This document shows, one piece after another, positions 17,305-36,960 of a stretch of 55,350 nt of DNA (its first letter is position 1; each line of letters begins with the position of its first letter). The notes under the pieces were generated by a model, which ran no database searches, was not told the DNA's origin, and saw only the letters and a program-made list of their open reading frames with translations. The stretch is from Chiloscyllium plagiosum (lineage: Eukaryota). Position numbers and translations under genes: made by a program. The stretch is from contig NC_057757.1 of NCBI RefSeq assembly GCF_004010195.1, positions 4,037,498-4,092,847 of the forward strand, given 5' to 3'.

Positions 17305-17475
17305 CTAGGAGTGCTCTGAAGTTCTGCCAAGGATTCGCGAGTAGATCTCCCCGTCCTCCGATGGGTAAGGGAGTTGAAACGATGTCGATGCTGCCACTGG
17401 GACTGTGATCACACTGTACAAAACCGTGTCAGCCTCTCCCGCCTCTTCAGCTCGGACCCGAGACACCTCGGAGGG
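17305..17475 (-). CDS. Gene A exon 5: terminal coding exon with ITIM and ITSM-like motifs
   Basis: Acceptor catgacctttccag|CCC, phase 0. Encodes PSEVSRVRAEEAGEADTVLYSVITVPVAASTSFQLPYPSEDGEIYSRILGRTSEHS*, ending at TAG (17307-17305). VLYSVI is at 17424-17407 and EIYSRI at 17349-17332. Unique sequence between repeats. Confidence 0.85.
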   Translation of the reverse strand, partial: PSEVSRVRAEEAGEADTVLYSVITVPVAASTSFQLPYPSEDGEIYSRILGRTSEHS

Positions 17476-19451
17476 CTGGAAAGGTCATGCAGATATGAAA
17501 CAGTCAGTCAATCACTCGGTTGCATGGGTTCACTTTAACTCAGAGGCCAGTCAGCCCATCTATCCTGCCCCGCCATACTACATGATGATTCCTCGATGGC
17601 CCACCATCCACAAGGCACAAGTCTAGGAGTGTGAGGGGATATTCCCCACTTGCCCTGGGTGGGGAAGCTCCAACAACACTCGAAGAAGCTCAACACTATC
17701 CAGGGACAAAGCAGCCCTTGCTTGACTGGAACCACAGCCACAAGCATCCCCTCCCTCCCCCATTGACCCTCAGTAGCAGCAGTGTGTACCATCTACAAGG
17801 TGCACTGCAGTAGATCACCAAAGATCCTTAGACAGCACCTTCCAAACCCACGGCCACCTCTATCTAGGAGAACATGGGGAAGCAGATACATGGGAACACT
17901 ATCACGTTCAAGTTCTCCTCTGAACCACTCACCATCCCGACTTGGAAATATGTTGGCTGTTCCTTTGGTGTTGCTGGGTCAGAATCCTGGAACTCCCTCC
18001 TTAATGGTGCTGTGTGGGTGTCCCTACAGCACACAGACTGCAGTGGTTCATCAAACAGAGATAGCTGTGGGGGGGTGGGGGTGGGGGGGTTCAAGTACAT
18101 AGTTCTTTGAAAGTTGTGTTACATGTAGACAGGGTGGTTAAGGAGGCATTTATTATGCTTGTCTTCATTGCTCAGACCAATGAATATAGGAGTTGGGAAG
18201 TCATGTTGTGTTGTGCTCTATGGCACATTATCACCTCAATAAAACTGGCAAAATGTAGATGTCTTAAATATTGTGATGTCCAAACTTTTACAGTCATAGA
18301 ATTGTACAGCATGAAAATAGACCCTTCAGTCCAATTCATCCATGCTGACCATGTGTCCTAAATTAACTTTGTCCCATTTGCCAGTATTTGGCCCTATTTT
18401 CATATACCCATCCAGATGCCTTTTAAATGCTGTAATTGTATCAGCCTCTATCAGTTCCTCTGGCAGCTCATTCCATTCACGCACCACCCTCTGCGTGAAA
18501 AGGTTGCTCCTTAGGTCCCTTTTAAATCTTTCCTCTCTCAACTTAAACCTATGCCCTCTAGTTCTGGAATCCCCCACCTCAGAGAAAAGACTTTGTCCAT
18601 TTATCCTATCCATGCCGCTCATGAATTTATAAACCTCTTTTAAGGTCACCCCTCAGCCTTCGACGCTCCAGGAAAAACAGCTCCAGCCTATTCAACCTCT
18701 CCCTGTAGCTCAAATCCTCCAACCCTGGTAACATCCTTGTAAACCGTTTCTGAACCCTTTCAAGTTTCACAACATCTTTACCGTAGCAGGGTGACCAGCA
18801 TCGCATGCAGTATTCCAAACGTGGTCTAACCAATGTCCTGTATGGTCACAACACGGCCTCCCAACTGCTCGACTCACTGCACTGGCCAATGAAGGCAAGC
18901 ATACCAAACACCTTCATCACTGTCCAGTCTACCTGTGACTCCACTGTCGAGGTACTGTAAACCTGCACTCCAAGGTCACTTTGCTCGGCAACACTCTCAG
19001 GACCTTACCATTAGGTGTATAAGTGCTGCCCTGTGTATTTCTGTTTCTGTCAGTCTATTTTCAATCTTCAATTAAGCGTTGGCATATTGCTATCAATGAC
19101 ATGTTTGATGAGGTTCAGTGTGTGTTCCTCTTCGGCCATTGACTCAGAGAACCTCAGACCAAACCTTGCAGAAACAGAGCAGGTCTGGCAACATCGGTGG
19201 AAAGAAAAATAGAGATCACGTTTCATCTCGATCCAACATCATAATCTTAGACTGTGACGCCTCGCACCCCGCTCCGCCATGCCAGGTTTTGAACTCTATC
19301 GTCCATTGGCAACGTCCTTCCTGCTTTATGTTTCCTCATGTGTCCTCTTTTGAGAACCTCCGCCTGGACAGCAATTTTGGAAAGAGGAACATGGCTAACA
19401 GTTTGAGGTCGGTATGACTTAACTAATCACAAGTATTCTGGCCCTGAATGC

Positions 19452-20459
19452 TGTGACAATGTTGCCCTTTAACAAGGTTATGTTGTCCTTAGTTTCTTTT
19501 ACAAAGAAGTAAGAAAAGATGCAGACTGCAAAACGTCTATGTTGAAGAGTTTTCGGGACAATTTGATTTTAGCTAACAGATACTGCCTGAGGCAAAAAGG
19601 CTTTTAAGTTTAAATGAACACAACACTTGTACAAAGAAAAGTGAGTGGCCAGTTCTCTTAGTTCAGCATTTCTCTAGTTTTGTTCTGTTTTAGCACAGTA
19701 GAGTTGAAACAGCTGATGGACTCTAAACAAGAAGGTGCTCTGTCTCTGGCCTAACTCATGTTAGACCCTACGTTTCATTTTGATTTTCGCAGTGCTAAGC
19801 GTTGTTTATGGGGATTTTTGCAAGTATTTGGAACACCATCATTAATTTGGGACATTCTGCTGAGTTTTCGTATAGGTTCCGTTATTCTGTATTCTGTTCT
19901 CAATTGTTTGTGTTTCGATTGGTAATTTTGTAAATAAATTCCGCTTTGTTTTAAACGAAATAGCTGGTCCAACTGCATCTCTCCTGGAATATCCTCGTTA
20001 CACCTGCATGATGCATAGAGTCTGGGCTACATTTTTGAAATGTTTTCAGCGTTTCTGGCTTGGCCTATAATAGGTTGGGATATCTTCGATAATTCCAATT
20101 TCGGATTAGGTTTGTCAGACTGTAATGCTGCGAATGTTAGGTTCTGTTCCTGGTATTCAGTTTATTTGCTTTAAATGGTCTTTGGGATAAAAATGCCTCT
20201 TTTCATCAACAAGAGGTTTCTGTGTGTGGAAAAAATGGCTTTGGGGGTTTTGCAAAAAGTGGTTAAGGCCAAGCTGCTGGAATTAGCAGGCAATTTGGAG
20301 TTGAAGCTGACCTCTTCCCTGAGGAAAGGTGAGTTAATTATAGCAATAATCCAGCAATTACATTTGCTGGAAGCGTCACCAGAATTTTTAGAGACGGCCA
20401 AAATTCAACTAAAAATAAAGCAACTTGAAAAAGAGGAAAACAGTAATGAATTACCCTAA
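19452..20459 (+). mobile_element. LTR plus start of gag from a truncated Gypsy-type LTR retrotransposon
   Basis: TGTGACAA...GCCTATAATA (19452 to about 20072) resembles the 4217 LTR in its ends and layout. It is followed by ORF 20175-20459 (LQKVVKAKLLELAGNLELKLTSSLRKGELIIAIIQQL plus coiled coil), resembling a gag N-terminus. Cut off by CR1 sequence. Confidence 0.6.
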
Positions 20460-22399
20460 AATGAAAAGTTCAGAAATGGACTGAGGAGATTTGGGAGGGG
20501 AAACGAAAAAAACTTGGGGGGAAGGGTTATGGAAAACCCAAAGGCGTTCTAAGCATACATGGGGAATAACAGAATGACCAGACAGAGGGTAGGGTTGAAC
20601 AAGGATAGTGGAGAGAACTTGCGCCTGGAGATTGAAAAGTTAGGGCAGGTGTTAAATGAGGTTTTTGTTTTGCTTCAGTATTCACTCGACAGAGTGAGAC
20701 CACCATGGACCAGTTTAATAGGCTTGAACAGGTTAATGTTAATTAACTCGATATGTTGGATTTTTTTGGAAGCAACAAGGCAGATAAGTCCCCAGGACAG
20801 GACCAAAGGTACTAAGGAAAGCAAATAATGAGAATGTTGCACTTCTGGCGATGATCTTTGTATCCTCACTCTCCACGGGCGTAGTACTAGATGACCGAGG
20901 GAAGGCGGATGTTATTTTTCTGTCCAAGAAAGCGAATACGAAAGTCCCCGGTAATTACAGACCAGTCAGTCGCACTTCTGCGATAAGCAATGTAAAGGAA
21001 AGGGTCCTGAGGGATGGAATTTATGACTATTGGGAAAAAGATAGTTTTATTAAAGATAGTAAGCATGGCTTTGCGAGGGGTAGTTCATGCCTCACAAGCC
21101 TTATTGAGTTCTTACAAGGGGGCATAGCTTTAAATTAAGGGGGGGGGGGTAGGTATAGGACAGATGGTACGGGTATGTTCTTTACTCAGCGAGTCGTGAG
21201 TTCATGGAATGCTCTGCCAGTAGCAGTGGTGGACTCTCCCTCATTATGGGCATTTAAGCGGGCATTGGATAGGCATATGGAGGATAGTGGGCTAGTGTAG
21301 GTTAGGTGGGCTTGGATCGGTGCAACATCGAGGGCTGAAGGGCCTGTACTGCGCTGTATTCTTCTATGTTCTATGTTCTATGAAACAGGCTTGAGGGACT
21401 GAATGGCCTACTCCTGGTCCTAGTAACGAATTTGGAACCACTAATTGGCCCCACATTCACCCCCCACACCCCAATTAATTGCCCCTCCCTCCAAACTGAT
21501 GGTTTAAATTGAGTTTGTTTTAAACCAATAGCATGCAAGAGACAATCAGAACAGGAGGGTGCACCAGAATATATTTACCTGAAGTGAAGAAGGCGTTTGG
21601 CATACTGTCCTTTATTGGTCAGAGCATTGAGTGTAGGAGTTGGGATGTCATGTTGCGGCTGTACAGGATATCGGTTCAGCCACTGTTGGAATATCGAATG
21701 CAATTCTGGTCTCCTTCCTATCAGAAGGATGTTGTGAAACTTGAAAGGGTTCAGAAAAGATTTACAAGGATGTTGCCAGGGTTGGAGCGCTTGACCTATA
21801 GAGAGAGGCTGTACAGGCTGGGGCTGTTTTCCCTGGAGCGTCGGAGGCTGAGGGGTGACCTTATAGAGGTTTATAAAATCATGAGGGGCCTGGATAGGAT
21901 AATTAGACAAGGTCTTTTCTCCCTGGGGTGGGGGAGTCCAGAACTAGAGGGCATAGGTTTAGGGTGAGAGAGGAAAGATATAAAAGGCAACTTTTTCATA
22001 CAGAGGGTGGTCCGCGTATGGAATGAGCTACCAGAGGAAGTGGTGGAGGCTGGTGCAATAACAGCATTTAAAAGGCATCTGGGTGGGGATATGGATAGGA
22101 AGGGTTCAGAGGGATATGGATCAAATGCTGGCAAATGGGACTAGTTTACGTTAGGATATCTGGTCGGCATGGACGAGTTAGACCGAAGGGTCTTTTTCCG
22201 AGCTGTACATCTCTATGACTCTAAATATATACATGCATCGAGGAGAGACACAGGCACAGACTGGGGGAATTGGGATTGAGGGTGGGGCGGAGGTCGATCA
22301 GAAAATGGACAGGCCCTGAAAGGGGAGAGGGGAAACCTCTTTCGTATGGATTCTGAATCACCCCTGCATATTTTACGACAAATTCTGCTTGTTAACTCA

Positions 22400-22444
<45 letters not shown>

Positions 22445-23656: not shown

Positions 23657-24873
23657 TAAATCTTTCTTCATCAACTGGAAAATATGCCCTCTTATCTTGA
23701 AATCCTGCACCCTAGGGGAAAGATACCTGCTATTTATCTTATCCACACGCTTCATTACTTTACAAAGCTCTTTAAGGTCACCTCTCAACTTCCTGCACTC
23801 CAGTGAAAGAAGTCCCAGCCTATTCAGCCTATATTGATAATTCAGAACTCCTGTTCCCAGCAATGTCCTGGTAAATCTTTTCTCAACACTGTCGAGCTTA
23901 ATAACATTTCTCCTACAACAGGGTGACCAGAACCACACACAGTACTCCAGAAAAGGCCTCACCAATGTCCTGTAACAGCGTCACTGTGACGGCCCAATTC
24001 CTATACTCAAAGGGCTGGATAATGAAGGCAACATCCAGCGTGTGATGCTGGAAAAGCACAGCAGGTCAGGCAGCATCTGAGTAGCAAAAGAATCGACATT
24101 CCGGGCAAAAGCCCTCCGTCAGGAATGCCTGCTGTGCTTTTCCAGCACCACACTCTCCACTTGGATCTCCGACATCTGCAGTCCTCACTTTCTCCCAATG
24201 AAGGCAAGCGCCTTTTCAACCACCAATATGTGATTGTTTTAGAGATTCATCTGAACCCAGCTGACTATATCTTATATAAGATTCACTTTATTCTTAACTT
24301 GCACCTGGGTGGCATGGTGGCTCAGTGGTTAGCACTGCTGTGTCACAGTACCAGGGACCCCGGTTTGATTCCGGCCTCAGATGACTGTCTGTATGGCATT
24401 TGTATGTTCTCCCCATGTCTGGGGACTAATGCACCTAACCTCCACAGCCCTGAACTCTATGGGCAATTTAGCATGGATAATTCACCTAATGTGCACGTCT
24501 TTGGACTGGTTTCCTCCCACAGTCCAAAGGTGTGCACGTTAGGTCAATTGGCCATGCTAAATTGCCCATAGTGTTCAGGGATGTTTAGGTTAGGTGCATA
24601 AGTCAGGGGCAAATGTGGAGTAATAGAGTAGGGGAATGGGTCTGGGTGGGTTCTTCTTCAGAGGGTCGGTTTGGGCTGAAGGGCCTGTTTCCACACTGTA
24701 GGGATTCTATGATTCTCAATATCTTTATTCACCCATTGCTTCTTAATCTTACCTGCCTCACTCTAACAGGAACAGAACTACTCTCAACTCTCATCATCAC
24801 AATCTTGACAACCTCTCTCCCCAGACCTTGCTGAGTTTCCCCAGCAACTTTCCATCTTTGGCTTTCGGCATAC

Positions 24874-24956
24874 TTGCCTCATGCTCCAACGGTAGATCAC
24901 CGGTCTCGTCTCTTCCTCTGGCTTCCTGTGATTCCGATTCCAATCCTGCAAGAGAC
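24874..24956 (-). CDS. Gene A exon 4: short cytoplasmic exon, two possible boundary pairs
   Basis: Model A: 24945-24878, 68 nt, tcttgcag| ... GAG|gcaagt (GC donor), encodes (G)LESESQEARGRDETGDLPLEHE. Model B: 24956-24874, 83 nt, ttgacag| ... CAA|gtatgc, encodes (G)LLQDWNRNHRKPEEETRPVIYRWSMRQ. Both convert phase 1 to phase 0, which is what joining exon 3 to exon 5 requires. Confidence 0.68.
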
Positions 24957-27282
24957 CTGTCAACATTAGGAGAGGAGACCAGGCCAACAGGAGGAGGTGT
25001 GACAGCTGACTGGAGTTGGCCTAACTGCCTGCCTCTTAATAATACAGGAGTCCTTTGATCAGATCCCGAACCAGAGCCCGAGGGTTGAAGGAGCTGGGAA
25101 AGCAGAACACCGTGGCTCAGTGGTTAGCATTGCTGCCTCATAACACCAGGGACACGGGTTCAATTCCACCCTTGGGTGACTCCACTCTGTGGAGTTTGCA
25201 CGTTCCCCCTGTATGTGCATGAGTTCCCTCCAGGTTCTCTGGTTTTCTCCCACGGTCCAAAGAAAAGATTTGCAAGGATATTGCCAGGGTTGGAGGACTT
25301 GAGCTACAGGGAGAGGTTGAATAGGCTAGGGCTGTTTTCCCTGGATCGTCAGAAGCTGAGGGGTGACTTTATAGAGGTTTTATAAAATCACGAGGGGCAT
25401 GAGTAGGATAAATAGACAAAGCCTTTTCCCTGGGGTGTGGAGTCCAGAACTAGAGGGCATAGGTTTAGGATGAGAGGGTAAAGATATAAAAGAGACCCAA
25501 GGGACAACATTTTCAAGCAGAGGGTGGTACGTGTATGGAATGAGCTGCCAGAGAAAGTGGTGGAGGCTGGTACAATTACAACATTTAAAAGGCATCTGGA
25601 TGGGTATATGAAGAGGAAGGATGTGGAGGGATATGGGCCAGGTGCTGGCAGGTGGGACTAGATTCGGTTGGGATATTTGGTCAGCATGGACGAGTTGGGC
25701 TGAAGGGTCTGTTTCCATGCTTAACATCTCTATGACTCTATGTGCAGGTTAGGGTGGATTGGCCATGCTAAATTGTCCAAGTCAGGTGGGTCAACTATGG
25801 TAAATGTAGGGCGGGTGGGATGCTCTTCAGAGAGTCAGTACACACTCAAGAGACCCAATGGCCTCTCTCTGCATGGATTCTATGAAGGTTTGGCTGGAGG
25901 AATAAAGGCTTCAACTATTTTCTCAATAGCAAGGGTTTGGAAAGCTGAAACACAAAGGGACATGGGAGTCCTAGTTCAGGATTCTCTTAAGATTGACATG
26001 TAGGTTCAGGTGGCAGTTATAAAGGCAAATGCAATATAGGCGTTCATTTCAAAAGGGCTAGAATACAAGTGCAGAGATGTTCTGAGGCTGTATAAGGCTC
26101 TGGTCAGATCACATTTGGAATACCGTGAGCAGTTTCGGGCCCCGTATCTAAGGAAGGCTGTGCGGGCCTTGGAAGGGAGGGTCCAGACGAGGTTTACAAG
26201 CAAGATCCCAGGGATGAAGGGCTTGTCATTTGGGAGCGGTTGAGGACTCTGGGTCTGTACTCGATGGGGTTTGGAAGGATGGGGGTGGGTGGAATCTGAT
26301 TGAGAAGGGGTTTCCACCGGTTGGAGAGACTAGGACCAGAGGGCACAGCCTCAGGAGTGAAGGGATGGACTGAGATGAGGAGGAATTTCTTCAACCAGAG
26401 GGTGGCGACTCTGTGGAACTCATTGTCACAGAGAGCTGTGGAGGGCAAGTCATTAAGGCAGAGGTAAATAGATTCTGAGGAGGGTCACTACACCAGAAAC
26501 TTTAACTGTTTCTCTCTCTATAGCCCCTGTTAGACCCTGCTGTGCTTATCCAGCAATTTCTGGTTTTTGTTTCTGATTTCCAGCATCCAGAGTTTTTTGA
26601 CATTTCAGATACGTTCTCGATTGGTAAGGGGGATCAAGGATTACAGGGAGAGGGCGGGATAATGGGGTTGGAAAACATATCAGCCATGATCGAATGGTGG
26701 AGTTGATTTGGTGGACCAAGTGGGGCCAATTCTGCTCCTATATCTTGTGGTCAGAAGGTAGCAATGACTCCAGGGATTAGTGGAGACCATTCAGTCCCTA
26801 AGATCCATTCTATCATTGAGGTAGATTTCTGCTAGTGATGCCCAGAGTGAGGAAGAGGACACGGATTGGCATGTCGAAAGTCCTGCTCAGTTGAGATTTC
26901 TTTCAACACCCTGAGGTTTTCAAGGAGAATGGAAAGGCTGGTTGATAGAATTTTCCAAGGAGTGGGAATCCCTTGCTGAGAGATTCCCTGAGCAACCATC
27001 TACCTAACAGCAGTGGGACTGTTCGAACTCCCCGATTTTAAAGGATCCTCTCGGAGGGTGAGAGACAGACGGGGTGTTGGATGCATTGTCTGGAGGAATG
27101 CTCAATTCTCAGGGAATTGTCTTGGAGTTCACAACATCAGGTGAAATGGCAACCAGAAATCCCAGTCTAATGTTCCAGACCAGGATTTGACATGGAGATG
27201 TTCAGAAACCCCTCCTACCACCACTCCAATGCCCGCAAAATACATGAATTGGCTGCAATGATTGATTCATGAACACACACAC

Positions 27283-27411
27283 CAGTCAGTCTCCTGCCTC
27301 TGACCAAGAGGAGTGAAGTAACCAGTGTGCACAGGAAGATCCCAGAGAGCAGCCAAGCTGCCATCGACGCCAGCCATTTCCCATTGCTGTAAAATTCAGG
27401 AGGTCCTTCAC
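27283..27411 (-). CDS. Gene A exon 3: stalk, transmembrane helix and basic stop-transfer sequence
   Basis: Acceptor cttcctcctttccag|GT, donor CTG|gtgtgt, 129 nt, phase 1-1. Encodes (G)EGPPEFYSNGK-WLASMAAWLLSGIFLCTLVTSLLLV-RGRRLT. No charged residue in the helix. Confidence 0.88.
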
Positions 27412-29504
27412 CTGGAAAGGAGGAAGAGCCATCAGATTAGACACAAACCGGCTCCGGGAAAAGGCTTTCTCCCAGCCTCTCTTTGCACATTGATGCCCTG
27501 AACTGGATTCAAATCCTGCTCGAGGTTTTGTTCCAGCGAGTGCGCTGAGGGAGGATTTGGAGGAGCAGAGAGACGTTGAAAGAAAGACAGTTATGTTTCC
27601 TACCTGTGAACCCCCATCTCTCTGTTCCCTTCCCCTCCAACCCTGACTTCAACCATCATCCTCTCTGTTTCTCTCTGTCTGTCTCTCTGTCTCCCTGTCT
27701 CTCACTCTCTCTCTGTTGCTCTCTTTCTCTCTATCTCCCTGCCTCACTGTCTCTNNNNNNNNNNNNNNNNNNNNNNNNNNNNNNNNNNNNNNNNNNNNNN
27801 NNNNNNNNNNNNNNNNNNNNNNNNNNNNNNNNNNNNNNNNNNNNNNNNNNNNNNNNNNNNNNNNNNNNNNNNNNNNNNNNNNNGTCATACAGTACGGAAA
27901 TAGACCCTTCGGTCCAACCAGACCATGCAGACCAGATATCCCAAACTAAACCAGTCCCACCTGCCTGCTACTGGCCCATATCTCTCTAAACCTTTCCTAT
28001 TCAGGTACTTATCCAAATGTCTTTAAAATGTTGTAAATGTACCCACTTCCACCATTTCCTCAGGAGGTTTGTTCCACACATGAACACCCCGTGTAAAAAA
28101 GTTACCCCTCGTGTCTTTTTAAAATCTATCTCCGCTCTCCTTAAACATATGCCCCTTCGTCTTGAAATCCCTTACCCTAGCAAAAAGACACACACTCTCT
28201 CTCTATCTTACTCTTGTCTCTCTCTTTCTTTCTGCATCTCTGTTTTTCTTTCTTCCTGTCTCGTTCTCTGTCTGTCTCTCTATCTCTGTCTTTCTCTGTC
28301 ATAGAGTCATACAACACGGAAACAGACCCTTCGGTCCAACCAGTCCGTGCTGAACATAATCCCAAACCAAACTAGTCCCACCTACCTGCTCCTGGCCCAT
28401 AAACCTCTAAACCTTTCCCAATCATGTACTTATCTAAATGGCTTTTAAGTGCTGTAACTGTACCCGCATCCACCACTTCCTCTGGACGTTCATTCCACAT
28501 CCGAACCACTCTCGGTCTAAAAAAGTTACCGTTTACGTCTTTTTAAAATCTTTCTCCTATCACCTTAAAAATATGATAGGATTAGGATATTGGGCTGAAT
28601 GGGCCTTTTCCCATGCTGTAGACCCTCACAGATGGGCTGAAGGGTCTCTTCCTCTGCTGCTGACCTGCACAGATGGGCCAAAAAGCCTCTCCTTATGTTG
28701 CAGATCTCCACAGTTGGGCCAAAAGGCACCTTCCTATGTTGTAGACCTCCATAGATGGGCCGAAGGGCCCCTTCCTTTGCTGTAGACCACCACAGATGGG
28801 CCTCTCCCTATACTGTACACCACAGATGGGCCAAAGGGCCCCTTCCTTTGCTGTAGACCACCACAGATGGGCCTCTCCCCATGCTGTAGACCACCACAGA
28901 TGGACCGAAGGGCCTCTTCCTGTGCTGTCATCCTCCACAGATAGCCCCTAGTCTTGAAATACCTCACGTTAGGGAAAAGGCACACACTCTCTCTCTCTCT
29001 CTCTCTCTCTCTNNNNNNNNNNNNNNNNNNNNNNNNNNNNNNNNNNNNNNNNNNNNNNNNNNNNNNNNNNNNNNNNNNNNNNNNNNNNNNNNNNNNNNNN
29101 NNNNNNNNNNNNNNNNNNNNNNNNCTCTCTCCCTCTCTCTCCCTCTCTCTCTCTCTCTCTCTCAAGACTGGCACTCAGTGCATTCCTAAGGGAATCCTAC
29201 TCTATTAGACCCGTCTTTCAGTCTGTAACAATCTCCATTCACGACCTGCCTGCTGTCCTTACCTGGTCTGGTCTACACATGACTCTAGACTTCACAGCCA
29301 ATGTGGTTGACTTTTAAGTGTCCCTCTGAAAGATTTTCCATTCGGGGCAAACAGGAATGGCCAATAAATGCTGGCCCAGCCAGTGACACCCCCACCCTAT
29401 GAATAAATTAAAACAGAATCTAATTCACTCCTGAGTAATTGCTTGTAGAAGTTTCTCCACCACTGAATTTAAACTGATTGGGTTTGAGGGAATTGACTAG
29501 AGTT

Positions 29505-30121
29505 GTGGAGGTCAGCAGCACAGAAAGAGACCCTTCGGCCCATCTGAGGAGGGCTACAGCACAGAAAGAGACCCTTTGGCCTATCTGTGGAAGGCTACCG
29601 TATAGGGAAAGGCCCTTCAGTCCATCTGTGGAGGGCTACAGCACAGCAAGAGACCCTTCAGCTCATCTGTGGAGGGCTACAGTATAGGAAGAGGCCCTTC
29701 GGCACATCTGTGAAAGGCTACCATATAGGGAGAGGCCCTTTGGCCCATCTGTGGAGGGTTACAGCACAGCAAGAGACCCTTTGGCTATCTGTGGTGATCT
29801 AGAGAACAGGAAGACACCCTTCGGCCCATCTGTGTAGTCTACACAAAACTAGACTTGCCGGCCATCTGTGGAGGACAACAGCACAGGAAGAGGGCCTTCA
29901 GCCCGTCTGTGGTGGTCTACAGCATTGGGAGAGACCCATCAGCCCATCTGCAGAGGGCTATAGCATAGGAAGAGACCTTTTGGCCAATCTGAGGAGGTCT
30001 ACAAAATAAGGAGAGGCCTTTCAGCCCATCTGTGCAGGTTGACAGCAGAGAAAGAGACCCTTCGGTCCATCTGTGCAGCTATACAGCATAGGAAAAGGCC
30101 TCAGCTCAATATCCTAATCCC
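29505..30121 (+). repeat. About 40-bp diverged tandem array; inverted partial copy at 28577-28942
   Basis: Unit approximately ACAGCATAGGAAGAGGCCCTTCGGCCCATCTGTGGAGGGCT. The reverse complement starting at 30121 (GGATTAGGATATTG...) matches 28579 onward unit by unit. Confidence 0.85.
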
Positions 30122-30368
30122 ATTTTGCAGCACACTTGGCCCACAGCCTTGGCCTCACAAGTGCACATCTCAACACTTCCTCAAGGCCTCTCCCACCCTC
30201 ACAGGCAGCGAGTTCCAGACTCCCCCCTGTCCTCCCAACACCCTCTGGGCGAATCCCACCACCTTTTCTTCGGCGTTCGGGGATAACTGAAACATCATCA
30301 AATCCACCCTCACTTCCTTCAAAACCCTCGGACGCGTCCCAACGGGTCCCGGACTCCAAAAGGTGTAC

Positions 30369-30731
30369 CTGACGCCTCAACGATCAAAACAGTTCCGTTC
30401 CCCCGTCCTGTCTTAATCGGGACCGGTCGCTCAATCTGAAGGTGACAGTAATATGTCCCGTTGTCCTTCAGCTGGGCGCTGTTGATGTGCAACATGAAGA
30501 GTCCCGAGTTCCATTTGATGGAGGCGCTGATCCTGTGGTGCCTACAGTTTTCAGTATGACTGTAGTTTTGCATCTTACAGGAGAGGATGGTGTCGTCCTC
30601 ATTTGCCCATTCAAAGAACGCTTCAGAGATCTGCTGTGGGGTGTCAAGGCTGCAGTTTACATGGGCATCAGCTCCTTCTTTCACAGTGAGAATTGAGGGA
30701 GTTTGGGAAATCAAGATGTCAGTATAGGCAC
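30369..30731 (-). CDS. Gene A exon 2: VJ-type IgV domain resembling the CD28/CTLA-4 family
   Basis: Acceptor ttttcag|GT, donor TCAG|gtacac, 363 nt, phase 1-1, open frame. Has B-strand Cys (HVNC), C-strand Trp (FFEW), DNGTYYC and a J-like GRGNGTVLIV. Extra Cys pair SCKMQNYSHTENC. F-G loop CHLQIERPVPIKTGRGNGT has the same length and P-x-P/G positions as CTLA-4 CKVELMYPPPYYLGIGNGT. Confidence 0.93.
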
Positions 30732-30959
30732 CTGAAAACATAAGAACATTAGAATGTAAGAACTAGGAGCAGGAGTAGGCTGTCTGGCCAATCGATGCTG
30801 CTCGGACATTCAGTAAGGTCAGGGCTGATCTTTTTTGTGGACCCAGCTCCACTTACCCATCCACTCACCCTAACACACCAGACACATGCACAGACCAGCT
30901 ATTCAACAACAATCATCCTAACACCCACAAACGGAGCTGCATCAGGACATTATTTAAAC

Positions 30960-31519: not shown

Positions 31520-32207
31520 TGTAACTCCCTATCCAAAAAAACCTATACAACGTATTCAGGAACAACGGGTATGCGACAAGCACAGTCCAAATCTAAACAA
31601 GACACAACACTCCCAGAGACTCTAGCCACACTCTCATACATTAAAAACATCTCAGAGATGATGACAAGACTACTGCAACCCATATGCATCGTGGTAGCCC
31701 ACAAACCTACCGGCACACTGAGACAGCTCCTGATTAATCTAAAGGACCCCTTACCAACAACCAGCAGAATGAACATCATATACAAAATACCCTGCAAGGA
31801 CTGCAACAAACATTACACTGGACAGACAGGCAGGAAACTAGCCATCAGGATACATGAGCACCGACTAGCCACCAAAAGACACGATCAACTATCATTAGTA
31901 TCCTTACACACAGAGGATGAGGGACACCAGTTCGACTGGGACAATATATCCATCCTGACATAGGCTAGACAGAGACACGCACGGGAATTCCTAGAGGCCT
32001 GGCATTCAAACTGGAACTCCATCAACAATATATCGATTTGGACGCCATTTACCAACCATTCAGGAAAGCGATATCACCCACCACAACAGACCAAGACACA
32101 TAAACAGAAAGCGGGACAGAACACCAGCATTTCACTTATAATGTCACTGAGCATGGTGACCAAATGTCTGAGAACAAACCTACCAGCTCAGCGAACAAAC
32201 TTACAAC
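31520..32207 (+). mobile_element. Penelope-like element fragment (GIY-YIG endonuclease region)
   Basis: ORF 31508-31963 contains VAHKP, LKDP and NIIYKIPCKDCNKHYTGQTGRKLAIRIHEH, a GIY-YIG signature of PLEs. Premature stop present. Confidence 0.88.
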
Positions 32208-33058
32208 CCCGCCCTAACCCTTAATTCGTTACTGTTCCAAAATCTATCTATCAACAGTCAACCGGGTAGCTTCAACTGTTTCCCTTGGCAGGGAATTCCA
32301 CAGGTTCACAACCCTTTGGGGGAAGAAATTCCTCCTTAACTCAGTCCTGAATATGCTCTCCACTATTTTGAGGCTATGCTGCCTAGTTCTAGTTCCACCC
32401 ACCAGTGGAAACAACCTCCCTGCTTCTATCTTATCTACTCCCTTCATCATTTGATATGTTTGTATAAGATATCCCCTCATTCTTCTAGATTCTAATGAGC
32501 ATGATCTTACAGAGTGATCTTATAGAGGTTTATAAAATCATGAGGAGCATGGAAAGAGAATAGGCAAGGTCTTGTCCCCAGGGTCCAAAACTAGAGGGGG
32601 TGCAGGTTTAAGGTGAGAGGGAAAAGGTTTAAAAGGGACCCGAGAGGCAACTTTTTCATGCAGAGGGTGGTGCCTGTATGGAACGAGCTGCCAGAGGAAG
32701 TGGTGGAGCCTGGTACAATTACAACATTTAAAAGGCATTTGGATGGGTACATGAATAGGAAAGGTTTGGAAGGGTATGGACCAAGTGCTGGCAAATAGGA
32801 CTGGATTAATTTAAGATATCTGCTCTGTTTCTGTGCTGTACAACTCTGAGACTCTATGTGTATAGTCTAGTTTACTCAATCTCTCCAGATTGTAAACTTT
32901 ATGGTGTTTGAAAGGGTCTTTGTGAGTGTGTGAGCCGAAAGGGAGAGAGCCAGCCCCTTCCCCCATTGCAGTTCTTTACCCATAGGGACCTTTATGTCTT
33001 CTAAAATGTTCCTGTTCCTCAAAAGACCTTTTGGATATGGAGTTACACATCCTCACAA

Positions 33059-33515
33059 CTGTTAAAACCAGACCAAACCCTCTCAAAACATATTAAGAAG
33101 GTGGCTGAGACTTTAACGTTTTTTTATTTTAAACGCAAGTGTTAAGGCATTGTGTTCCGGATGCAAATCAATTGGTTAAACTACCAGGCTCGAAGTAAAA
33201 CACACTTTATTCAAACCCTTTAGTTAAAATACAACAAGAGAAAGCAGAAATTGGAATAACTTTACTGGAAAACTTAATAGAATAACAGATTATTGAACTA
33301 TTCAACAGTAACTGTCCCAATATAGTAATATCCCATGAACACACCCTTGGCAAAGGCAAATTCAGTAAAATAGGTTATCTCACAGGCAATTCTCCAATAC
33401 AGGAGGGAAAAATAACGCATCAAGAGAAAACTCTGATAGAGAGAGGAACAGGGAGAGATGTACTGCAGTGTTCAAACCCAGCTTCAAGACCCAAGCAAGT
33501 GCTGCTGATTTAAAG
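33059..33515 (-). mobile_element. LTR-like fragment; partial inverted copy at 31345-31508
   Basis: 33059-33215 is a diverged reverse complement of 31345-31508. On this strand it ends ...TTTAACA with AATAAA upstream, like the other LTR 3' ends. Confidence 0.5.
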
Positions 33516-34738
33516 AAATTGGTACATTGCAGAAATAAAATCACTGTTTTCCCACTCTCTCATAAAAGAGAGATAACTGGTGGTCGGTCCAAGTTGAGAG
33601 TCACCATGTCTCATGCCCTCATGGCAACCTTAGCTGCTGTGGGAATTGAACCCACACTGTCGGGGTGAGACTACGTTGCAAATCAGCCAACTGAGCCAAG
33701 ACAGATTAGAGTAATAGAGTCATACAGCACAGAAACAGACCATTCGGCCCAACATGTCCATGCTGACCAAGATTCCCATACTAAACTAGCACATTTGCCC
33801 ACATTTTGCCCATATCCCTCTAAATTCTTCCAAATAATGTACCCGTCTAAATGTCTTCTCAATGTCGTGATTGTCCCTGTCTCTACCACTTCCTATAGTA
33901 GCTTGTTCCATACACATATCATTTCCTCTGTGTGAAAAAGTTGCCCCTCAGGTCACATTTATATCTTTTCTCTCTCACTTTAAATCTCTGGTTTTTGGGC
34001 TCCCCTCCTCCAGGGAAATGACCTTGACCATTCACCTTGTCCATGCCCCTCATGACTTTATAAATCTCTGTAAGGTCACTCCTCAGTCTTCGACGTCCAA
34101 GGAAAAAGTCCCCGCCTCTCCTTGTAACTGAAACCCTCCTGTCTCAGTAACATCCCTGTCAAATCTTTTTGGCACCCATTCCAGTTTACAACATCATTCC
34201 TGTAGCAGGGCAACCCAGGCTTGTACGCAGTGCTCCAGATGTGGCCTCACCAATGTTTTGCACAGCCCCAACATGATGTCCCAACTCCTGGACGGTTCTC
34301 CCCATTTCCCCCAGTTCCAAAAAAAAACAAAGATCTGTCTATCTCAGCTGTAAATGTACTCAAGCACTGGAGCTTCCTCAAGTGAAGATGGATTAGAGTC
34401 ACAGGGTCATACAGACACAGACCCTTCGGTACAACTTGTCCATGCAAACCAGACATCCCAATCTGACCTAGTCACATTTAGTTTAGATTAGATTCCCTAC
34501 AGTATGGAAACAGGCCCTTCAGCCCAACAAGTCCACACCGACCCTCCAAAGAGCAACACAACCAGACCCATTCACGTACGCTATAATTAAACATGACTAA
34601 TGCACCTAACATTATGGGCAATTTAGCATGGCCAATTCACCTGACCTGGTCATATTTGCCAGCATTTGCCCCATATCTGTGTAAATGTTCATCTGAAGCA
34701 CTGGGCACTTCTAGTCATTGTCTGCCACTAGGAAAAAG

Positions 34739-35240
34739 TTGTTGTGGTTCTGTTCGCCGAGCTGGGAATTTGTGTTGCAGACGTTTCGTCCCCTGTCTAG
34801 GTGACATCCTCAGAGCTTGGGAGCCTCCTGTGAAGCGCTTCTGTGATCTTTCCTCCGGTATTTGTAGTGGTTTGAATCTGCCGCTTCCGGTTGTCAGTTC
34901 CAGCTGTCCGTTGCTATTATAGGACAAGCCAAACAGAGAACAGCCAGGGAATTCCTAGAGGCATGGCACTCATCCACAGATTCAATCAATAAGCAAATCG
35001 ATCTGGACCCAATATACCGACCACTGCAGCGGACAGCTGGAACTGACAACCGGAAGCAGCAGGGACAAATCACTACAAATGCCGGAGGAAAGATCACAGA
35101 AGCGCTTCACAGGAGGCTTCCAAGTACTGAGGATGTCACCTAGACAGGGGACGAAATGTCTGCAACACAAATTCCCGGCTCGGTGAACAGAACCACAACA
35201 ACGAGCACCCGAGCTACAAATCTTCTCACAAACTTTGAAC
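34739..35240. mobile_element. Penelope-like element 3' end with inverted pseudo-LTR copy and hammerhead cores
   Basis: 34739-34914 is the reverse complement of about 35026-35200. 34920-35025 encodes the PLE C-terminus (REFLEAWHS). CTGAGGA-stem-GAAA is present in both arms. Confidence 0.85.
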
Positions 35241-35494
35241 TCAGAAAAAGACCTGTTTAATCCTACTGTTTGCTTACTGTCTGCCAACCAGTTCTCTATC
35301 CATTTCAACAGATTATCCCTAATCCCGTGCCATCTAATTGTGCATACAATATCCAAAATCTGAGTAAGGTGAGGGGTGGAGGGGTGACTATTTCATGCAG
35401 AGGGTGGTGCATGTTTGGAATGAGCTGCCAGAGGAAGTGGTGGAGACTGGTACAATTACAATATTTAAAAGGCACCTGGATGGGTATATGAATA

Positions 35495-35717
35495 GGGGAA
35501 AGTGAGGACTGCAGATGCTGGAGATCAGAGCTGAAAAATGTGTTGCTGGAAAGGCGCAGCAAGTCAGGCAGCATCCAAGGAGCAGGAGAATCGATGTTTC
35601 AGGTATAAGCCCTTCTTCAGGATTCCTGAAGAAGGGCTAATGCCCGAAACGTCGATTCTCCTGCTCCTTGGATGCTGCCTGACCTGTTGCGCTTTTCCAA
35701 CAACACATTTTTCAGCA
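35495..35717. repeat. Palindromic PLE-derived short repeat; related copies at about 354-570, 3435-3520, 4465-4550, 14770-14960, 24040-24195, 42900-43010, 46160-46285, 48841-49030
   Basis: Arms ...GCAGCATCCAAGGAGCAGGAGAATCGATGTTTCAGG... and ...CCTGAAGAAGGGCTAATGCCCGAAACGTCGATTCTCCTGCTCCTTGGATGCTGCC... form an inverted repeat. The sequence matches the 3' end of the PLE at 10777-10865. Confidence 0.8.
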
Positions 35718-36893
35718 GGGTATATGAATAGGAAGGATTTAGAGGGATAGGGGTCGGGTGCTGGCTAGATTAATTTCAGATATCTGATTGGCATGGATTA
35801 GTTGGACCGAAGGATCTGTATCTGTGCTGTACAGCTCCACGACTCTGAATTTCAGATTTAAATTCAGGTAATGGTGGGATTTGAACCTGCAAACCCTCAA
35901 ATTGAAGATTAAAGGCTAATGGCATTTCTTAAAATCCAGATTAAAAGCAGTGTTTGATTTATTGTTATCACATGTACCTGAGTACACAGAAAAGTTTTGT
36001 TTTGTGAGCAGTACAGGCAGATTATAGCAAACAAGGACATTCAGATCATCAGGGGTTCAGACAGAGTGAGGCATACAAGTTTACACCTGCACAGAAAGTG
36101 TACAAAGGTCAGTGTTAGTTGAAGTTAAGAAGCTCCATATAGAAGCCTAATAAGAGGCTGTTCTTGAACTGTTGGTAGATGTGCTCAAGCTTCTGTTGCA
36201 ACATGCAACCATTTAAGGATAGCTATCTTTTTGCAGACAGTTCAGGATTGGCCATACACACTGACTTAGCCGGTGACACCCGCATCCTGTGACTGACTGA
36301 GAAGCCAAAAGCTCAACACAAGGATTTGATAACACAGGAGAGATTGATTAGACTGGGACGATACTCATTGGAACTTTGTGGAGTGAGGGGGTAGTCTTCA
36401 CGAAACATGTTAAATTATGAAGGGAACAGAGAAGATAGAAGCAGGGAGGTTGTTTCCACAGGGGGTGAAACTAGAACGAGGGGGGTGTAGCCTCAAAATA
36501 AGGGGGAGCAGATTTGGGACTGAGTTGAGGAGGACCTTCTACACCCAGAGGCTTGTGAATCTGTGGAATTCCCTGCCAAGGGAAGCAGTTGAGGCCAACT
36601 CGTTGAATGTTGACAGATAGATTTTGGAACAGGAAAGGAATTAAGGGTGAGCAAGCAGAGCTGAGTCCACAAGAAAGATCTAGCCATGATCTTATTGAAT
36701 GGCAGGGCAGCGACAAGGTGGCCTCCTCCTGCTCCTAGGTCTCATGTTCTGAGACCGGCTTTCGATTGAAATCGATTGCAATAAAAATCCGCCAGCGACT
36801 TTGATAGGGTTTGAAACTCAATCGGCACAGCAATTGAACTGGGTATTATCCACCCAACAGAGTGCAACTGGAACTTCCTTACAGCGTTCTTAC

Positions 36894-36960
36894 CTTGAAG
36901 ATCCAAGGCCAGAAAGATGAGCAGGGCGGTGAAAGTATTTAAGACGGCTTCAAATCCCAT
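36894..36960 (-). CDS. Gene A exon 1: signal peptide of a CD28/PD-1-family-like inhibitory receptor
   Basis: ATG in good context (gccgaaATGG). Encodes MGFEAVLNTFTALLIFLALDLQ with a hydrophobic core. Ends at a strong phase-1 donor CAAG|gtaaga; 67 nt. Joins in frame to the 30731 acceptor, giving ...LQGAYT/DILISQTP, a typical V-domain N-terminus. Confidence 0.85.

What the first reader, a model, noticed from the sequence alone, without database searches (positions are those of the whole stretch)
17305..36960. Complete 265-aa receptor with a CTLA-4-like ectodomain and a PD-1/BTLA-like tail
Seen: exons of 67+363+129+68+171 nt join without frameshift, with phases 1,1,1,0. The F-G loop has CTLA-4 spacing but reads ERPVPI instead of MYPPPY. 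There is a second Cys pair in the V domain and no stalk cysteine. The TM segment SGIFLCTLVT resembles CTLA-4 SGLFFYSFLLT but lacks the Tyr. Tail motifs VLYSVI and EIYSRI have tyrosines 25 residues apart. Known: PD-1 (Y223/Y248) and BTLA (Y257/Y282) have the same spacing, suited to tandem-SH2 phosphatases SHP-1/2, and PD-1 has the same five-exon layout. Inference: this is a mosaic inhibitory CD28-family member, probably not a straightforward orthologue of PD-1 (no TEYATI) or CTLA-4 (no MYPPPY/YVKM).
Basis: partly seen in the sequence, partly recalled or inferred. Interest (0 to 1): 0.85.

Follow-up and report, generated by a model that had tools for sequence, protein, structure and literature searches.

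The report
Shark V-set receptor with inhibitory-type tail
This is a real, expressed bamboo-shark gene for a small cell-surface receptor with one antibody-like domain and an inhibitory-looking tail; public databases already hold it, unnamed, and its clearest relatives are other shark and ray genes, not PD-1 or CTLA-4.

Summary
The five-exon model is correct. Minus-strand exons of 67+363+129+68+171 nt, phases 1,1,1,0, give 265 residues. Exon by exon these are identical to RefSeq XP_043539443.1, "uncharacterized protein LOC122544332" of Chiloscyllium plagiosum. Both N gaps lie in intron 2. Contigs from 3 of 4 runs laid join exon 2 to 3 and exon 3 to 4 exactly. Intron 4 has a GC donor.

The ectodomain is a VJ-type V-set domain. 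Overall it resembles TCR V-alpha most; CTLA-4, PD-1 and CD28 are lesser matches. Its F-G loop (E-R-P-V-P ... G-x-G-N-G-T) is in register with the published CD28H-type E-I-P motif.

The gene belongs to a supported orthogroup of sharks and rays (98/93). That group nests in neither the CD28H/CD28HL1-type group nor a group of elasmobranch paralogues with 1-3 V domains, but it shares its tail with the latter: an ITIM, then about 17-25 residues, then Y-x-E-I.

It is not PD-1 or CTLA-4. An inhibitory role is inferred, not shown. I rate it a new member of a known kind, of moderate interest. The scan also noted this stretch under s1-885744, and has unchecked CD28-like notes on other pieces of this genome.

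The parts
36894..36960 (-). Exon 1: ATG and a hydrophobic leader (22 codons plus 1 nt), donor GTAAGA
   Evidence: identical to P0151 residues 1-22
30369..30731 (-). Exon 2: V-set Ig domain (120 full codons)
   Evidence: Pfam V-set E 2.2e-10. AF2 model pLDDT 93.2. Identical to P0151 residues 24-143. RNA contigs cover it.
30391..30453 (-). F strand, F-G loop and G strand: Y-Y-C ... E-R-P-V-P-I-K ... G-R-G-N-G-T
   Evidence: E, both P, G-x-G and T are invariant in the 7-row orthogroup alignment.
30544..30579 (-). Second Cys pair (codons 51 and 62 of the exon-2 translation), in the C' and C'' strands of the model
   Evidence: A Cys pair 8-11 residues apart is present in 6 of 7 orthogroup rows; Heterodontus differs.
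27755..27883 (.). Assembly gap inside intron 2, not coding
   Evidence: The exon 2-3 joint is seen in contigs of X5 and X7.
29013..29124 (.). Assembly gap inside intron 2, not coding
27283..27411 (-). Exon 3: Cys-free stalk, uncharged TM helix with one conserved Cys, basic stop-transfer R-G-R-R
   Evidence: The TM Cys is present in all 6 orthologue rows that reach the TM.
24878..24945 (-). Exon 4: acidic cytoplasmic spacer (68 nt); the intron after it starts GC (24877-24876)
   Evidence: Contigs of X5 and X6 end this piece at 24878 and run on into further transcript.
17305..17475 (-). Exon 5: cytoplasmic tail with both tyrosine motifs and TAG
   Evidence: identical to P0151 residues 210-265
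17407..17424 (-). VLYSVI (Y229): fits the ITIM consensus (S/I/V/L)xYxx(I/V/L)
   Evidence: consensus as quoted in Kondo 2025 section 11. VLYNEI in Heterodontus; degenerate in rays.
17332..17349 (-). EIYSRI (Y254): distal Y-S-x-I motif, 25 residues after Y229
   Evidence: Y-S-E-I in Heterodontus, Pristis, Hypanus and Mobula. Y-[AT]-E-I in paralogues with 1, 2 and 3 V domains.

Best explanation
This is the intact, transcribed gene LOC122544332 of the whitespotted bamboo shark. It encodes a 265-residue type I membrane protein: a leader, one non-rearranging VJ-type V-set domain, a short Cys-free stalk, an uncharged TM helix and a 79-residue tail.

It belongs to an orthogroup seen in eight elasmobranch species, both sharks and rays. 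Its clearest relatives are elasmobranch paralogues with one to three V domains. These carry the same tail module: an ITIM-like V-x-Y-x-x-[IVL], then about 17-25 residues, then Y-[SAT]-E-I. The V domain keeps the F-G loop register of the CD28/CTLA-4/CD28H receptors (Glu/x/Pro/x/Pro, then G-x-G-N-G-T). That points to a deeper, unresolved link to that superfamily.

Proposed mechanism (inferred, not shown): the V face that includes the F-G loop binds a cell-surface ligand. Src-family kinases then phosphorylate Y229 and Y254. The two phosphotyrosines dock the tandem SH2 domains of SHP-1, SHP-2 or SHP-2L (or SHIP or Csk at the distal site). This dampens activation of the leukocyte that carries the receptor.
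For: Gene and model:
- Exon translations are identical to P0151 = XP_043539443.1.
- Splice sites are canonical except for one GC donor.
- Spliced contigs in 3 of 4 runs laid, from 2 studies, join exons 2-3-4 exactly.
- Non-repeat intron bins have depth near 0, so these runs hold RNA.

Fold:
- Pfam V-set E 2.2e-10.
- AF2 model pLDDT 93.2 with nine to ten strands.

Orthogroup:
- A library-wide HMMER search with exon 2 gave 174 proteins at E<=0.001. The best were all elasmobranch.
- The 7-row orthogroup has support 98/93.
- E, P, P, G-x-G and T of the loop are invariant in it.

Link to CD28H-type genes:
- Weaker hits carry Y-x-C-x3-[IV]-E-I-P. They include proteins that NCBI names TMIGD2 (E 1.7e-8) and 'CTLA-4-like'.
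- That motif is the published CD28H/CD28HL signature (Quiniou 2024, sections 15-16).
- The nearest Atlas clusters are named CTLA-4 and PD-1 family, score 0.95.

Tail:
- The ITIM consensus is met by VLYSVI.
- The distal motif has S at +1 and I at +3. Both are among the SHP-2 C-SH2 preferences quoted by Kondo 2025, section 20.
- The tail module aligns with the paralogues P0061, P0153 and P0004.
- There is no charged TM residue.
- PD-1's tyrosines Y223 and Y248 are also 25 apart (abstract of PMC7078208 in the listing).
Against: - No functional data of any kind.
- EIYSRI has Glu at -2, and orthologues have Q or A there. This fits neither ITIM nor ITSM. It also misses the (T/V/I/y) preference of SHP-2 C-SH2 at that position.
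- The proximal ITIM is kept in the two sharks with a full tail but not in three rays: P-V-Y-I-S-T in Hypanus and Mobula, no Tyr in Pristis.
- Y-Y spacing varies across the family: 25, 24, 20 and 17.
- Both motifs also fit Y-x-x-hydrophobic sorting signals.
- The whale-shark RefSeq model (P0002) lacks the tail altogether.
- The deep placement is unresolved. The orthogroup is nested in neither the E-I-P group nor the P-L-P-I group. Neither forced union is rejected: p-AU 0.186 and 0.512.
- No named CD28, CTLA-4, ICOS, PD-1, CD28X, CD28HL2 or CD28HL3 sequence could be put in the tree.
- The cell type that expresses the gene is unknown.
- The exon 4-5 and 1-2 joints were not seen in reads.
Confidence: 0.62

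Rival explanations
1. It is a true member of the CD28H branch of the CD28 family. Specifically, it is the cartilaginous-fish counterpart of CD28HL3. That is the only CD28H-like gene described with an ITIM/ITSM tail, and Quiniou et al. could not find it in Chondrichthyes.
For: - The loop is in register with Y-x-C-[polar]-x3-E-I-P-[PALV]-[PFL]; only I is replaced, by R or K.
- The nearest named non-family hits are TMIGD2 and CD28HL1-type proteins.
- A single V domain, TM and tail with an ITIM plus a second Tyr, as described for CD28HL3.
- Holding the orthogroup with the E-I-P group is not rejected: lnL lower by 4.55, p-AU 0.186.
Against: - The published CD28HL3 motifs are not met literally. Ours has R-P, not [IAVL]-P. 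It has V-x-Y-x-x-I and E-I-Y-S-R-I, not [IV]xYxxL and V-T-Y-x-x-V.
- By my tail-motif scan of the 150 listed hits, no bony-fish protein has such a tail.
- The best tree does not nest the orthogroup in the E-I-P group.
- The tail is shared with multi-V paralogues, which no CD28-family member has.
- None of the published synteny markers lies in the window.
- I had no CD28HL3 sequence, because supplements are closed.
Confidence: 0.25
2. The tail tyrosines do not mainly recruit phosphatases. They act as Y-x-x-hydrophobic sorting or endocytosis signals, as Y-V-K-M does in CTLA-4 (recalled). Or they dock other SH2 proteins such as Csk, SHIP or SAP-like adaptors. The receptor would then be a decoy, an adhesion molecule or a switchable receptor, not a PD-1-like brake.
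For: - Y-S-V-I and Y-S-R-I both fit Y-x-x-hydrophobic.
- The distal motif, which is the conserved one, lacks the -2 residue of ITIM and ITSM.
- The proximal ITIM is lost in rays.
Against: - VLYSVI is a textbook ITIM.
- The two-tyrosine module is kept in paralogues.
- The TM is uncharged.
- No Y-x-N or Y-x-x-M motif is present.
Confidence: 0.15
3. It is the shark orthologue of PD-1, CTLA-4 or BTLA, diverged beyond easy recognition.
For: - The five-exon layout and the 25-residue Tyr spacing resemble PD-1.
- The Atlas lists CTLA-4 and PD-1 clusters first.
- CTLA-4 is at Foldseek rank 9.
Against: - Kondo 2025 reports that shark PD-1 is found directly as the top BLASTP hit of known PD-1 (section 9).
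- The PD-1 loop has no conserved Pro (Quiniou section 21); ours has two invariant Pro.
- The PD-1 tail consensus is not met.
- CTLA-4-type genes of sharks sit in a three-gene cluster with P-[P/L]-P and a Y-x4-T TM motif. Here tblastn of the exons finds no second copy in the 55-kb window, and the TM has no Tyr.
- None of the 30 hits I looked up by name is called PD-1 or BTLA.
Confidence: 0.03

Closest known systems
CD28H (TMIGD2) and its paralogues CD28HL1-3 (Quiniou et al. 2024, PMC11599192)
   Same: - One V domain, a TM helix and a tyrosine-bearing tail.
- Loop register Y-x-C-x4-Glu-x-Pro-x-Pro, then G-x-G-N-G-T.
- These are the nearest named hits outside the orthogroup (E about 1e-8).
- CD28HL3 is described with an ITIM/ITSM tail.
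   Different: - E-[RK]-P instead of E-I-P.
- No Y-x-N-x (CD28H, HL2), no Y-[ED]-S-F (HL1) and no V-T-Y-x-x-V (HL3).
- Not nested in the E-I-P group in the tree.
- The same species has a separate E-I-P-P-P / Y-V-N-V gene (P0162).
- The tail is shared with multi-V paralogues.
CTLA-4
   Same: - Same loop length and the same positions of Pro-x-Pro and G-x-G-N-G-T.
- It is the best non-TCR structural match in Foldseek: rank 9, TM 0.78/0.81, rmsd 2.4.
   Different: - No MYPPPY, no Y-V-K-M, no stalk Cys and no Y-x4-T TM motif.
- The extra disulfide lies in C'-C'' instead of the position I recall for CTLA-4.
- 17-18% identity in the structural alignments.
- It is not in a three-gene cluster.
PD-1
   Same: - Five coding exons (for PD-1 this is recalled).
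- An ITIM plus a second Tyr 25 residues on.
- V-set structural match Z 14.1.
   Different: - The tail consensus (I/V)(D/E)YG(E/V)L(D/E)F ... (T/V)EYATIx(F/Y) is not met.
- The PD-1 loop lacks conserved Pro.
- PD-1 is a different gene in sharks (Kondo 2025).
Elasmobranch paralogues with L-[EK]-P-L-P-I loops and one to three V domains (unnamed; e.g. P0061, P0153, P0004, P0157)
   Same: - Same tail module: ITIM, spacer, Y-x-E-I.
- Similar loop (x-P-x-P-I).
- In whale shark and horn shark the recorded longest contig has the same length as for the orthologue, so they are probably on the same contig.
- Union with the orthogroup costs only 0.44 lnL.
   Different: - They form a separate supported group (95/88).
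- Many have tandem V domains.
- They are annotated only as 'uncharacterized', 'turtle homolog B-like' or 'PTGFRN-like'.
TCR V-alpha and other VJ-type V domains
   Same: They are the best overall sequence and structure matches: PDB phmmer E 4e-7, VIA Z 15-17. They share the J-like G-x-G-T-x-L G strand.
   Different: Our domain is encoded by a single unsplit exon, with no C domain. It sits in a receptor with its own signalling tail.

Membership tests
CD28 family as defined by Quiniou 2024 | A single extracellular V domain, a TM helix and a cytoplasmic tail with a tyrosine motif | tested here: met
CD28 family as defined by Quiniou 2024 | Pro motif in the CDR3/F-G loop at the canonical distance from Y-x-C, followed by G-x-G | tested here: met
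   Y-x-C, six residues, P-V-P, three residues, G-R-G, compared with the formulas in sections 14 and 16
CD28 family as defined by Quiniou 2024 | Clusters with named members in a phylogeny | tested here: inconclusive
   The orthogroup is separate. Union with the CD28H/HL1-type group is not rejected (p-AU 0.186). No named CD28, CTLA-4, ICOS, PD-1, CD28X, HL2 or HL3 rows were available.
CD28 family as defined by Quiniou 2024 | Lies in the conserved synteny block of a named member | not testable with these tools
CD28H / CD28HL1 / CD28HL2 | Y-x-C-[polar]-x3-E-I-P in the loop | tested here: not met
   E-R-P in 4 sharks and E-K-P in 3 rays; Ile is never present
CD28H / CD28HL1 / CD28HL2 | Tail motif Y-x-N-x (CD28H, HL2) or Y-[ED]-S-F (HL1) | tested here: not met
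   The tail tyrosines are VLYSVI, LPYPSE and EIYSRI
CD28HL3 | Y-x-C-x5-[IAVL]-P and a tail [IV]xYxxL ... V-T-Y-x-x-V | tested here: not met
   R-P in the loop. The tail has V-x-Y-x-x-I and E-I-Y-S-R-I. Spacing and logic are similar but the letters differ.
PD-1 | Tail consensus (I/V)(D/E)YG(E/V)L(D/E)F and (T/V)EYATIx(F/Y); no conserved Pro in the loop | tested here: not met
CTLA-4 / CD28 | M-Y-P-P-P-Y or P-[P/L]-P loop, Y-x4-T TM motif, and position in a three-gene cluster | tested here: not met
   P-V-P only. No Tyr in the TM. No paralogue in the window.
ITIM-bearing inhibitory receptors (a functional class) | At least one (S/I/V/L)xYxx(I/V/L) in the tail and no charged TM residue | tested here: met
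   VLYSVI, uncharged TM
ITIM-bearing inhibitory receptors (a functional class) | Phosphorylation-dependent recruitment of SHP-1, SHP-2 or SHIP, and inhibition of activation | not testable with these tools
   Needs pull-down and chimeric-receptor assays

The most novel reading that the evidence does not exclude
Sharks and rays carry an undescribed, lineage-wide family of VJ-type receptors. The family is a tenth branch of the CD28/CD28H superfamily that has expanded to forms with one to three V domains. It uses a shared ITIM ... Y-x-E-I tail and fills the inhibitory CD28H-like role that bony fish give to CD28HL3. In this gene it sits directly beside a V-set gene that could encode its ligand.
Probability: 0.3. 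Interest if true: 0.6.

Novelty: new member of a known kind. Interest (0 to 1): 0.4.

Why it matters
Cartilaginous fish are the oldest living lineage with lymphocyte co-signalling receptors. The 2024 survey of the CD28 family found no ITIM-bearing CD28H-like gene in them. This gene and its orthogroup form a concrete, expressed candidate for such an inhibitory receptor. Its linked paralogues show that the same tail is used with one to three V domains. That gives a testable system for asking how checkpoint-type signalling was assembled, including which SH2 proteins bind a Y-S-E-I site that lacks the classical -2 residue. The gain is incremental. The protein is already in RefSeq, the fold is ordinary and the function is only inferred.

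Tried and rejected
1. My own scan for a 68-nt exon 4 required a GT donor. It examined 459 open AG...GT candidates of 30-199 nt, of which 15 were 68 nt long. All were wrong, because the real exon has a GC donor. The exon was found only through P0151.

2. PDB sequence search with exon 2 and with the orthogroup profile A2. The 60 rows shown were almost all antibody or TCR V domains, so they could not rank CD28-family members.

3. The first AF2 run, on 7 rows, gave pLDDT 55.7 and was not used. The 44-row alignment gave 93.2.

4. Structure searches show a generic V-set fold. Z values from rank 16 to rank 50 are tied within 1, so I claim no family from them.

5. The search for homologous proteins returned little: A1 gave 16 proteins, P0160 gave 4 and P0002 gave 3. 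I obtained no CD28HL3, CD28HL2, CD28X, CD28, CTLA-4, ICOS or PD-1 sequence. The tree therefore cannot test membership directly.

6. tblastn of the exon translations against the window found no second copy. The next-best E for exon 2 was 0.57.

7. PD-1, CTLA-4 and BTLA orthology: rejected on motifs and on the papers read.

8. UrIg/UrIg2 (Flajnik 2025, outline and abstract only) and NKp30 or MHC-linked VJ genes (Verissimo 2023, passages only). UrIg proteins are V-C1-C2-C3, not this architecture. Neither text mentions ITIM, LECT2 or CD28.

9. Paper searches found no description of this gene or orthogroup. The supplements of Quiniou 2024, which hold the sequence lists, are closed and may contain it.

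10. Rows dropped before the trees.
- I left out 13 isoform or duplicate ids, all proteins over 600 aa, and domains that covered less than HMM positions 10-115 or scored under 39 bits. That left 86 rows.
- I hand-picked 47 proteins, giving 71 rows.
- The three groups were named after I had seen the motifs and the quick tree, so the AU tests are not a priori tests.

Full report
WHAT IS THERE.

The finding lies on the minus strand. Reading the sequence and translating each exon gives five exons:
- Exon 1: 36960-36894, 67 nt.
- Exon 2: 30731-30369, 363 nt.
- Exon 3: 27411-27283, 129 nt.
- Exon 4: 24945-24878, 68 nt.
- Exon 5: 17475-17305, 171 nt including TAG.

The total is 798 nt and the phases are 1,1,1,0. 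All acceptors are pyrimidine-rich AG sites. Three donors are GT. The donor after exon 4 is GC (GCAAGT). My own scan for exon 4 demanded GT and therefore missed it.

The two N runs named by the scan's program, 27755-27883 and 29013-29124, lie inside intron 2, between exon 2 and exon 3.

IS IT REAL?

A library-wide HMMER search with the exon-2 translation gave 174 proteins at E<=0.001. The best was P0001 from Chiloscyllium punctatum, 93% identical. Its 90% cluster also holds P0151 = XP_043539443.1-445.1, [quoted passage not shown], 265 aa.

Every exon translation is an exact substring of P0151, at residues 1-22, 24-143, 145-186, 188-209 and 210-265. The three split codons give the three Gly residues in between (for exon 4). 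Each exon was handled alone and the joined step was left out.

RNA EVIDENCE.

Of 22 runs listed for exon 2, none is on record as RNA among the holders. I laid four contig runs on 24800-30750 (4 of 4 were laid).
- Run X5 has a 950-nt contig in three abutting pieces: 24878-24944, 27282-27409 and 30367-30733. Record positions 258-324, 325-452 and 453-819 follow each other without a gap, and there are 0 other letters.
- Run X6 has a 457-nt contig that joins 27282-27414 to 24878-24944.
- Run X7 has a 440-nt contig that joins 27282-27409 to 30367-30650.
- Run X1 has only a 245-nt piece inside exon 2.

The offsets of 1-2 nt from my exon ends are letters shared by both sides of each joint. So 3 of 4 runs, from two studies, show the exon 2-3 and/or exon 3-4 joints. 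The 2-3 joint spans both N gaps.

Non-repeat intron bins have depth near 0: 26790-27187 has 0-3.6 and 29775-29973 has 0-1.84. These runs therefore behave as RNA. A processed DNA copy cannot be formally excluded.

Unspliced pieces also exist: 27385-27659, 26898-27291, 24917-25135, 30107-30298 and 30186-30361. These are pre-mRNA or retained introns.

The X5 and X6 contigs each run 257 nt beyond exon 4, which fits exon 5 (171 nt) plus 86 nt. X5 runs 131 nt beyond exon 2, which fits exon 1 plus 64 nt. Those parts lay outside the stretch and were not checked.

THE PROTEIN.

Exon 2 is a V-set domain (Pfam E 2.2e-10). Exons 3 and 5 match no Pfam family.

A model built on a 44-row alignment has pLDDT 93.2; a 7-row try gave only 55.7. 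The second Cys pair, residues 51 and 62 of the exon-2 translation, falls in the C' (46-54) and C'' (60-64) strands.

The stalk has no Cys. The TM helix is uncharged and has one Cys, which is kept in all six orthologue rows that reach it.

The tail tyrosines are VLYSVI (Y229), LPYPSE (Y246) and EIYSRI (Y254).

WHAT IS IT LIKE?

Overall, the domain looks most like TCR V-alpha and antibody VL:
- PDB phmmer: best E 4e-7, with no CD28-family chain among the 60 shown.
- The orthogroup profile gives the same picture.
- Foldseek: TCR V-alpha first. CTLA-4 chains are at ranks 9, 21, 29, 43 and 49 (TM about 0.78-0.81, rmsd 2.1-2.4).
- VIA-align over 48,161 representatives: TCR V at Z 15-17, PD-1 at 14.1 (rank 16), CD28 at 13.9 (rank 19), with many ties.
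- The Atlas feature search lists clusters named CTLA-4 and PD-1 family first, score 0.95. This is a lead only.

The informative part is the F-G loop. It reads Y-Y-C-H-L-Q-I-E-R-P-V-P-I-K-T-G-R-G-N-G-T.

Quiniou et al. 2024 (PMC11599192; I read the abstract, sections 14, 15, 16 and 21, and passages) define nine CD28-family members. They give these motifs:
- CD28H, CD28HL1 and CD28HL2: Y-x-C-[polar]-x3-E-I-P(-[PALV]-[PFL]).
- CD28X: Y-x-C-x6-P-P-P-x4/5-G-x-G.
- CD28HL3: Y-x-C-x5-[IAVL]-P with an ITIM/ITSM tail. They state that they "failed to detect cd28hl3 sequences in Chondrichthyes".

Our loop is in exactly this register, with E-R-P-V-P in place of E-I-P-P-P.

Among the weaker HMMER hits, a looser regular-expression scan (Y-x-C, three to five residues, E or D, any residue, P) marked 21 proteins under 450 aa, the six orthogroup sequences among them. 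Twelve of these read Y-x-C-x4-E-I-P. Of the ones I looked up by name:
- Two are called TMIGD2 or TMIGD2-like (amphibians; P0033 at E 1.7e-8).
- One is called "CTLA-4-like" (great white shark).
- Several carry the CD28HL1-type tail Y-[EQ]-S-[FIC]: sturgeon, Callorhinchus, Pelobates, bichir.

C. plagiosum itself has a separate E-I-P-P-P gene with a Y-V-N-V tail (P0162).

FAMILY AND TREE.

I cut V domains out of the stored hits with a local HMM and built two trees:
- A quick tree of 86 rows.
- A careful tree of 71 rows.

In both, the window groups with whale shark, horn shark, cloudy catshark, sawfish, stingray and devil ray. This orthogroup of 7 rows has support 98/93. With C. punctatum, that makes eight elasmobranch species. 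By the tree and by loop motif, no holocephalan or bony-vertebrate protein belongs to it among the listed hits. Caveats: 150 of the 174 hits were listed, and I looked up names for only 30.

Two other groups appear:
- 15 E-I-P rows of CD28H/HL1 type (support 89/74).
- 18 domains with x-P-L-P-I loops (support 95/88). These come from elasmobranch proteins with one, two or three V domains, plus one frog protein.

The orthogroup nests in neither group. Forcing it together with the E-I-P group costs 4.55 lnL (p-AU 0.186). Forcing it together with the P-L-P-I group costs 0.44 lnL (p-AU 0.512). Neither union is rejected. I named the groups after seeing the motifs and the quick tree.

THE TAIL POINTS TO THE LOCAL PARALOGUES.

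I aligned the cytoplasmic parts. The orthogroup and P-L-P-I proteins with 1, 2 and 3 V domains (P0061, P0153, P0004) share one module:
- V-[LV]-Y-x-x-[IVL]-x-x-P.
- Then a spacer.
- Then E-E-x-[AI]-Y-[SAT]-E-I.

The Tyr-Tyr spacing is 25 here, 24 in the horn shark, 20 in P0153 and 17 in the stingray.

The distal Y-S-E-I is kept in all four orthologues that have a full tail. The proximal ITIM is kept in the horn shark (VLYNEI). It is P-V-Y-I-S-T in two rays and has no Tyr in the sawfish.

In whale shark and horn shark, the paralogues are recorded with a longest contig of the same length as the orthologue's. They are therefore probably on the same contig. An unchecked note of this scan places a LEPLPI-type V gene 40.9 kb before the window.

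MECHANISM.

Shown:
- A transcribed gene and a V-set fold.
- An ITIM consensus at Y229 and an uncharged TM helix.
- A conserved distal Y-S-x-I.

Inferred:
- Ligand binding through the face that carries the invariant loop.
- Phosphorylation of the two tyrosines.
- Docking of tandem-SH2 phosphatases.

Kondo et al. 2025 (PMC12151841; I read the abstract, sections 9, 11 and 20, and passages) quote the SH2 preferences of SHP-2:
- N-SH2: (I/L/V/m)x-pY-(T/V/A)x(I/V/L/f).
- C-SH2: (T/V/I/y)x-pY-(A/s/t/v)..(I/v/l).

VLYSVI fits the N-SH2 pattern at -2 and +3. EIYSRI fits the C-SH2 pattern at +1 and +3 but not at -2.

The PD-1 consensus, (I/V)(D/E)YG(E/V)L(D/E)F ... (T/V)EYATIx(F/Y), is not met.

PD-1's Y223 and Y248 are 25 apart (abstract of PMC7078208, seen only in the search listing). 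Both motifs also fit Y-x-x-hydrophobic sorting signals, which is the main functional rival.

SURROUNDINGS.

tblastn of the exons finds no paralogue in the window.

Upstream of the gene, on the same strand, lies another V-set gene.
- Its V exon is 53513-53175: Pfam V-set E 1.5e-11; best PDB matches ROBO2 at 1.2e-9, CD276/B7-H3 at 1.3e-9 and TIGIT at about 1e-6; Atlas clusters VSIG10L2, TIGIT and CD200R.
- Its second exon is 50608-50267, with no Pfam match and no PDB match below E 1.

"B7-like" is therefore not established by my tests.

Between the two genes there is a 37-bp minisatellite of 39 copies, at 37756-39120.

The region 1-17000 holds retroelement fragments and two more N runs.

NOVELTY.

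The protein is already public but unnamed. Four full-text searches and the papers I read do not describe this gene or its orthogroup. The closed supplements of Quiniou 2024 might.

I rate it a new member of a known kind: an ITIM-bearing V-set receptor with a CD28-type loop. It belongs to an elasmobranch family that deserves a proper phylogeny. Interest is moderate.

LIMITS.

- I could not obtain named sequences for seven of the nine CD28-family members.
- The run kinds are not on record.
- All functional statements are inference.

Noticed in passing
window 24872-24877: Intron 4 of the receptor gene begins GCAAGT, so it is a GC-AG intron. Contigs of runs X5 and X6 use this donor. A scan that requires GT donors misses exon 4.
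   Followed up: yes
window 50267-53513 (minus strand): A second V-set gene lies upstream on the same strand. Its V exon is 53513-53175. Best PDB matches are ROBO2, CD276/B7-H3 and TIGIT; Atlas clusters are VSIG10L2, TIGIT and CD200R. Its next exon, 50608-50267, has no Pfam match and no PDB match below E 1. The earlier label 'B7-like' is not established by these tests.
   Followed up: partly
window 37756-39120: A minisatellite of a 37-bp unit, about 39 copies with 79% matches, lies about 0.8 kb upstream of the receptor's start codon. It produces long false ORFs on the plus strand.
   Followed up: partly
window 30319-30368 and P0001: The 159-aa protein annotated in C. punctatum (GCC21373.1) ends with the read-through of the exon-2 donor into intron 2. 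Contigs at 30107-30298 (X5) and 30186-30361 (X7) lie in that intron, but none listed bridges the donor. Whether a soluble isoform exists is open.
   Followed up: partly
P0002 (Rhincodon typus XP_048475988.1): The whale-shark RefSeq model reads the exon-4 region in another frame and past the donor used here. It ends without the ITIM / Y-S-E-I tail. This is either a different isoform or a mis-prediction.
   Followed up: no
window 25000-25800, 27785-28580, 29178-29575: Intron repeats, including the retroelement tail with ORFs that contain W-N-E-L-P-E-E-V-V, reach word depths of 1e5 to 3e6 in the contig runs. These are highly expressed or very abundant repeats. Both N gaps are flanked by CT-rich simple sequence.
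   Followed up: no
window 27283-27411: A single Cys inside the TM helix is conserved in all six orthologue rows that reach the TM. Rays have up to four. It may be a palmitoylation or dimer contact site.
   Followed up: no
P0048, P0075, P0077, P0040: These elasmobranch proteins are annotated 'immunoglobulin kappa light chain-like'. They carry a V domain with an E-I-P-P-P (or Q-I-P-P-P) loop and form a tight group inside the E-I-P group (support 100/100). Each has one V domain by my HMM in a protein of 299-414 aa.
   Followed up: no
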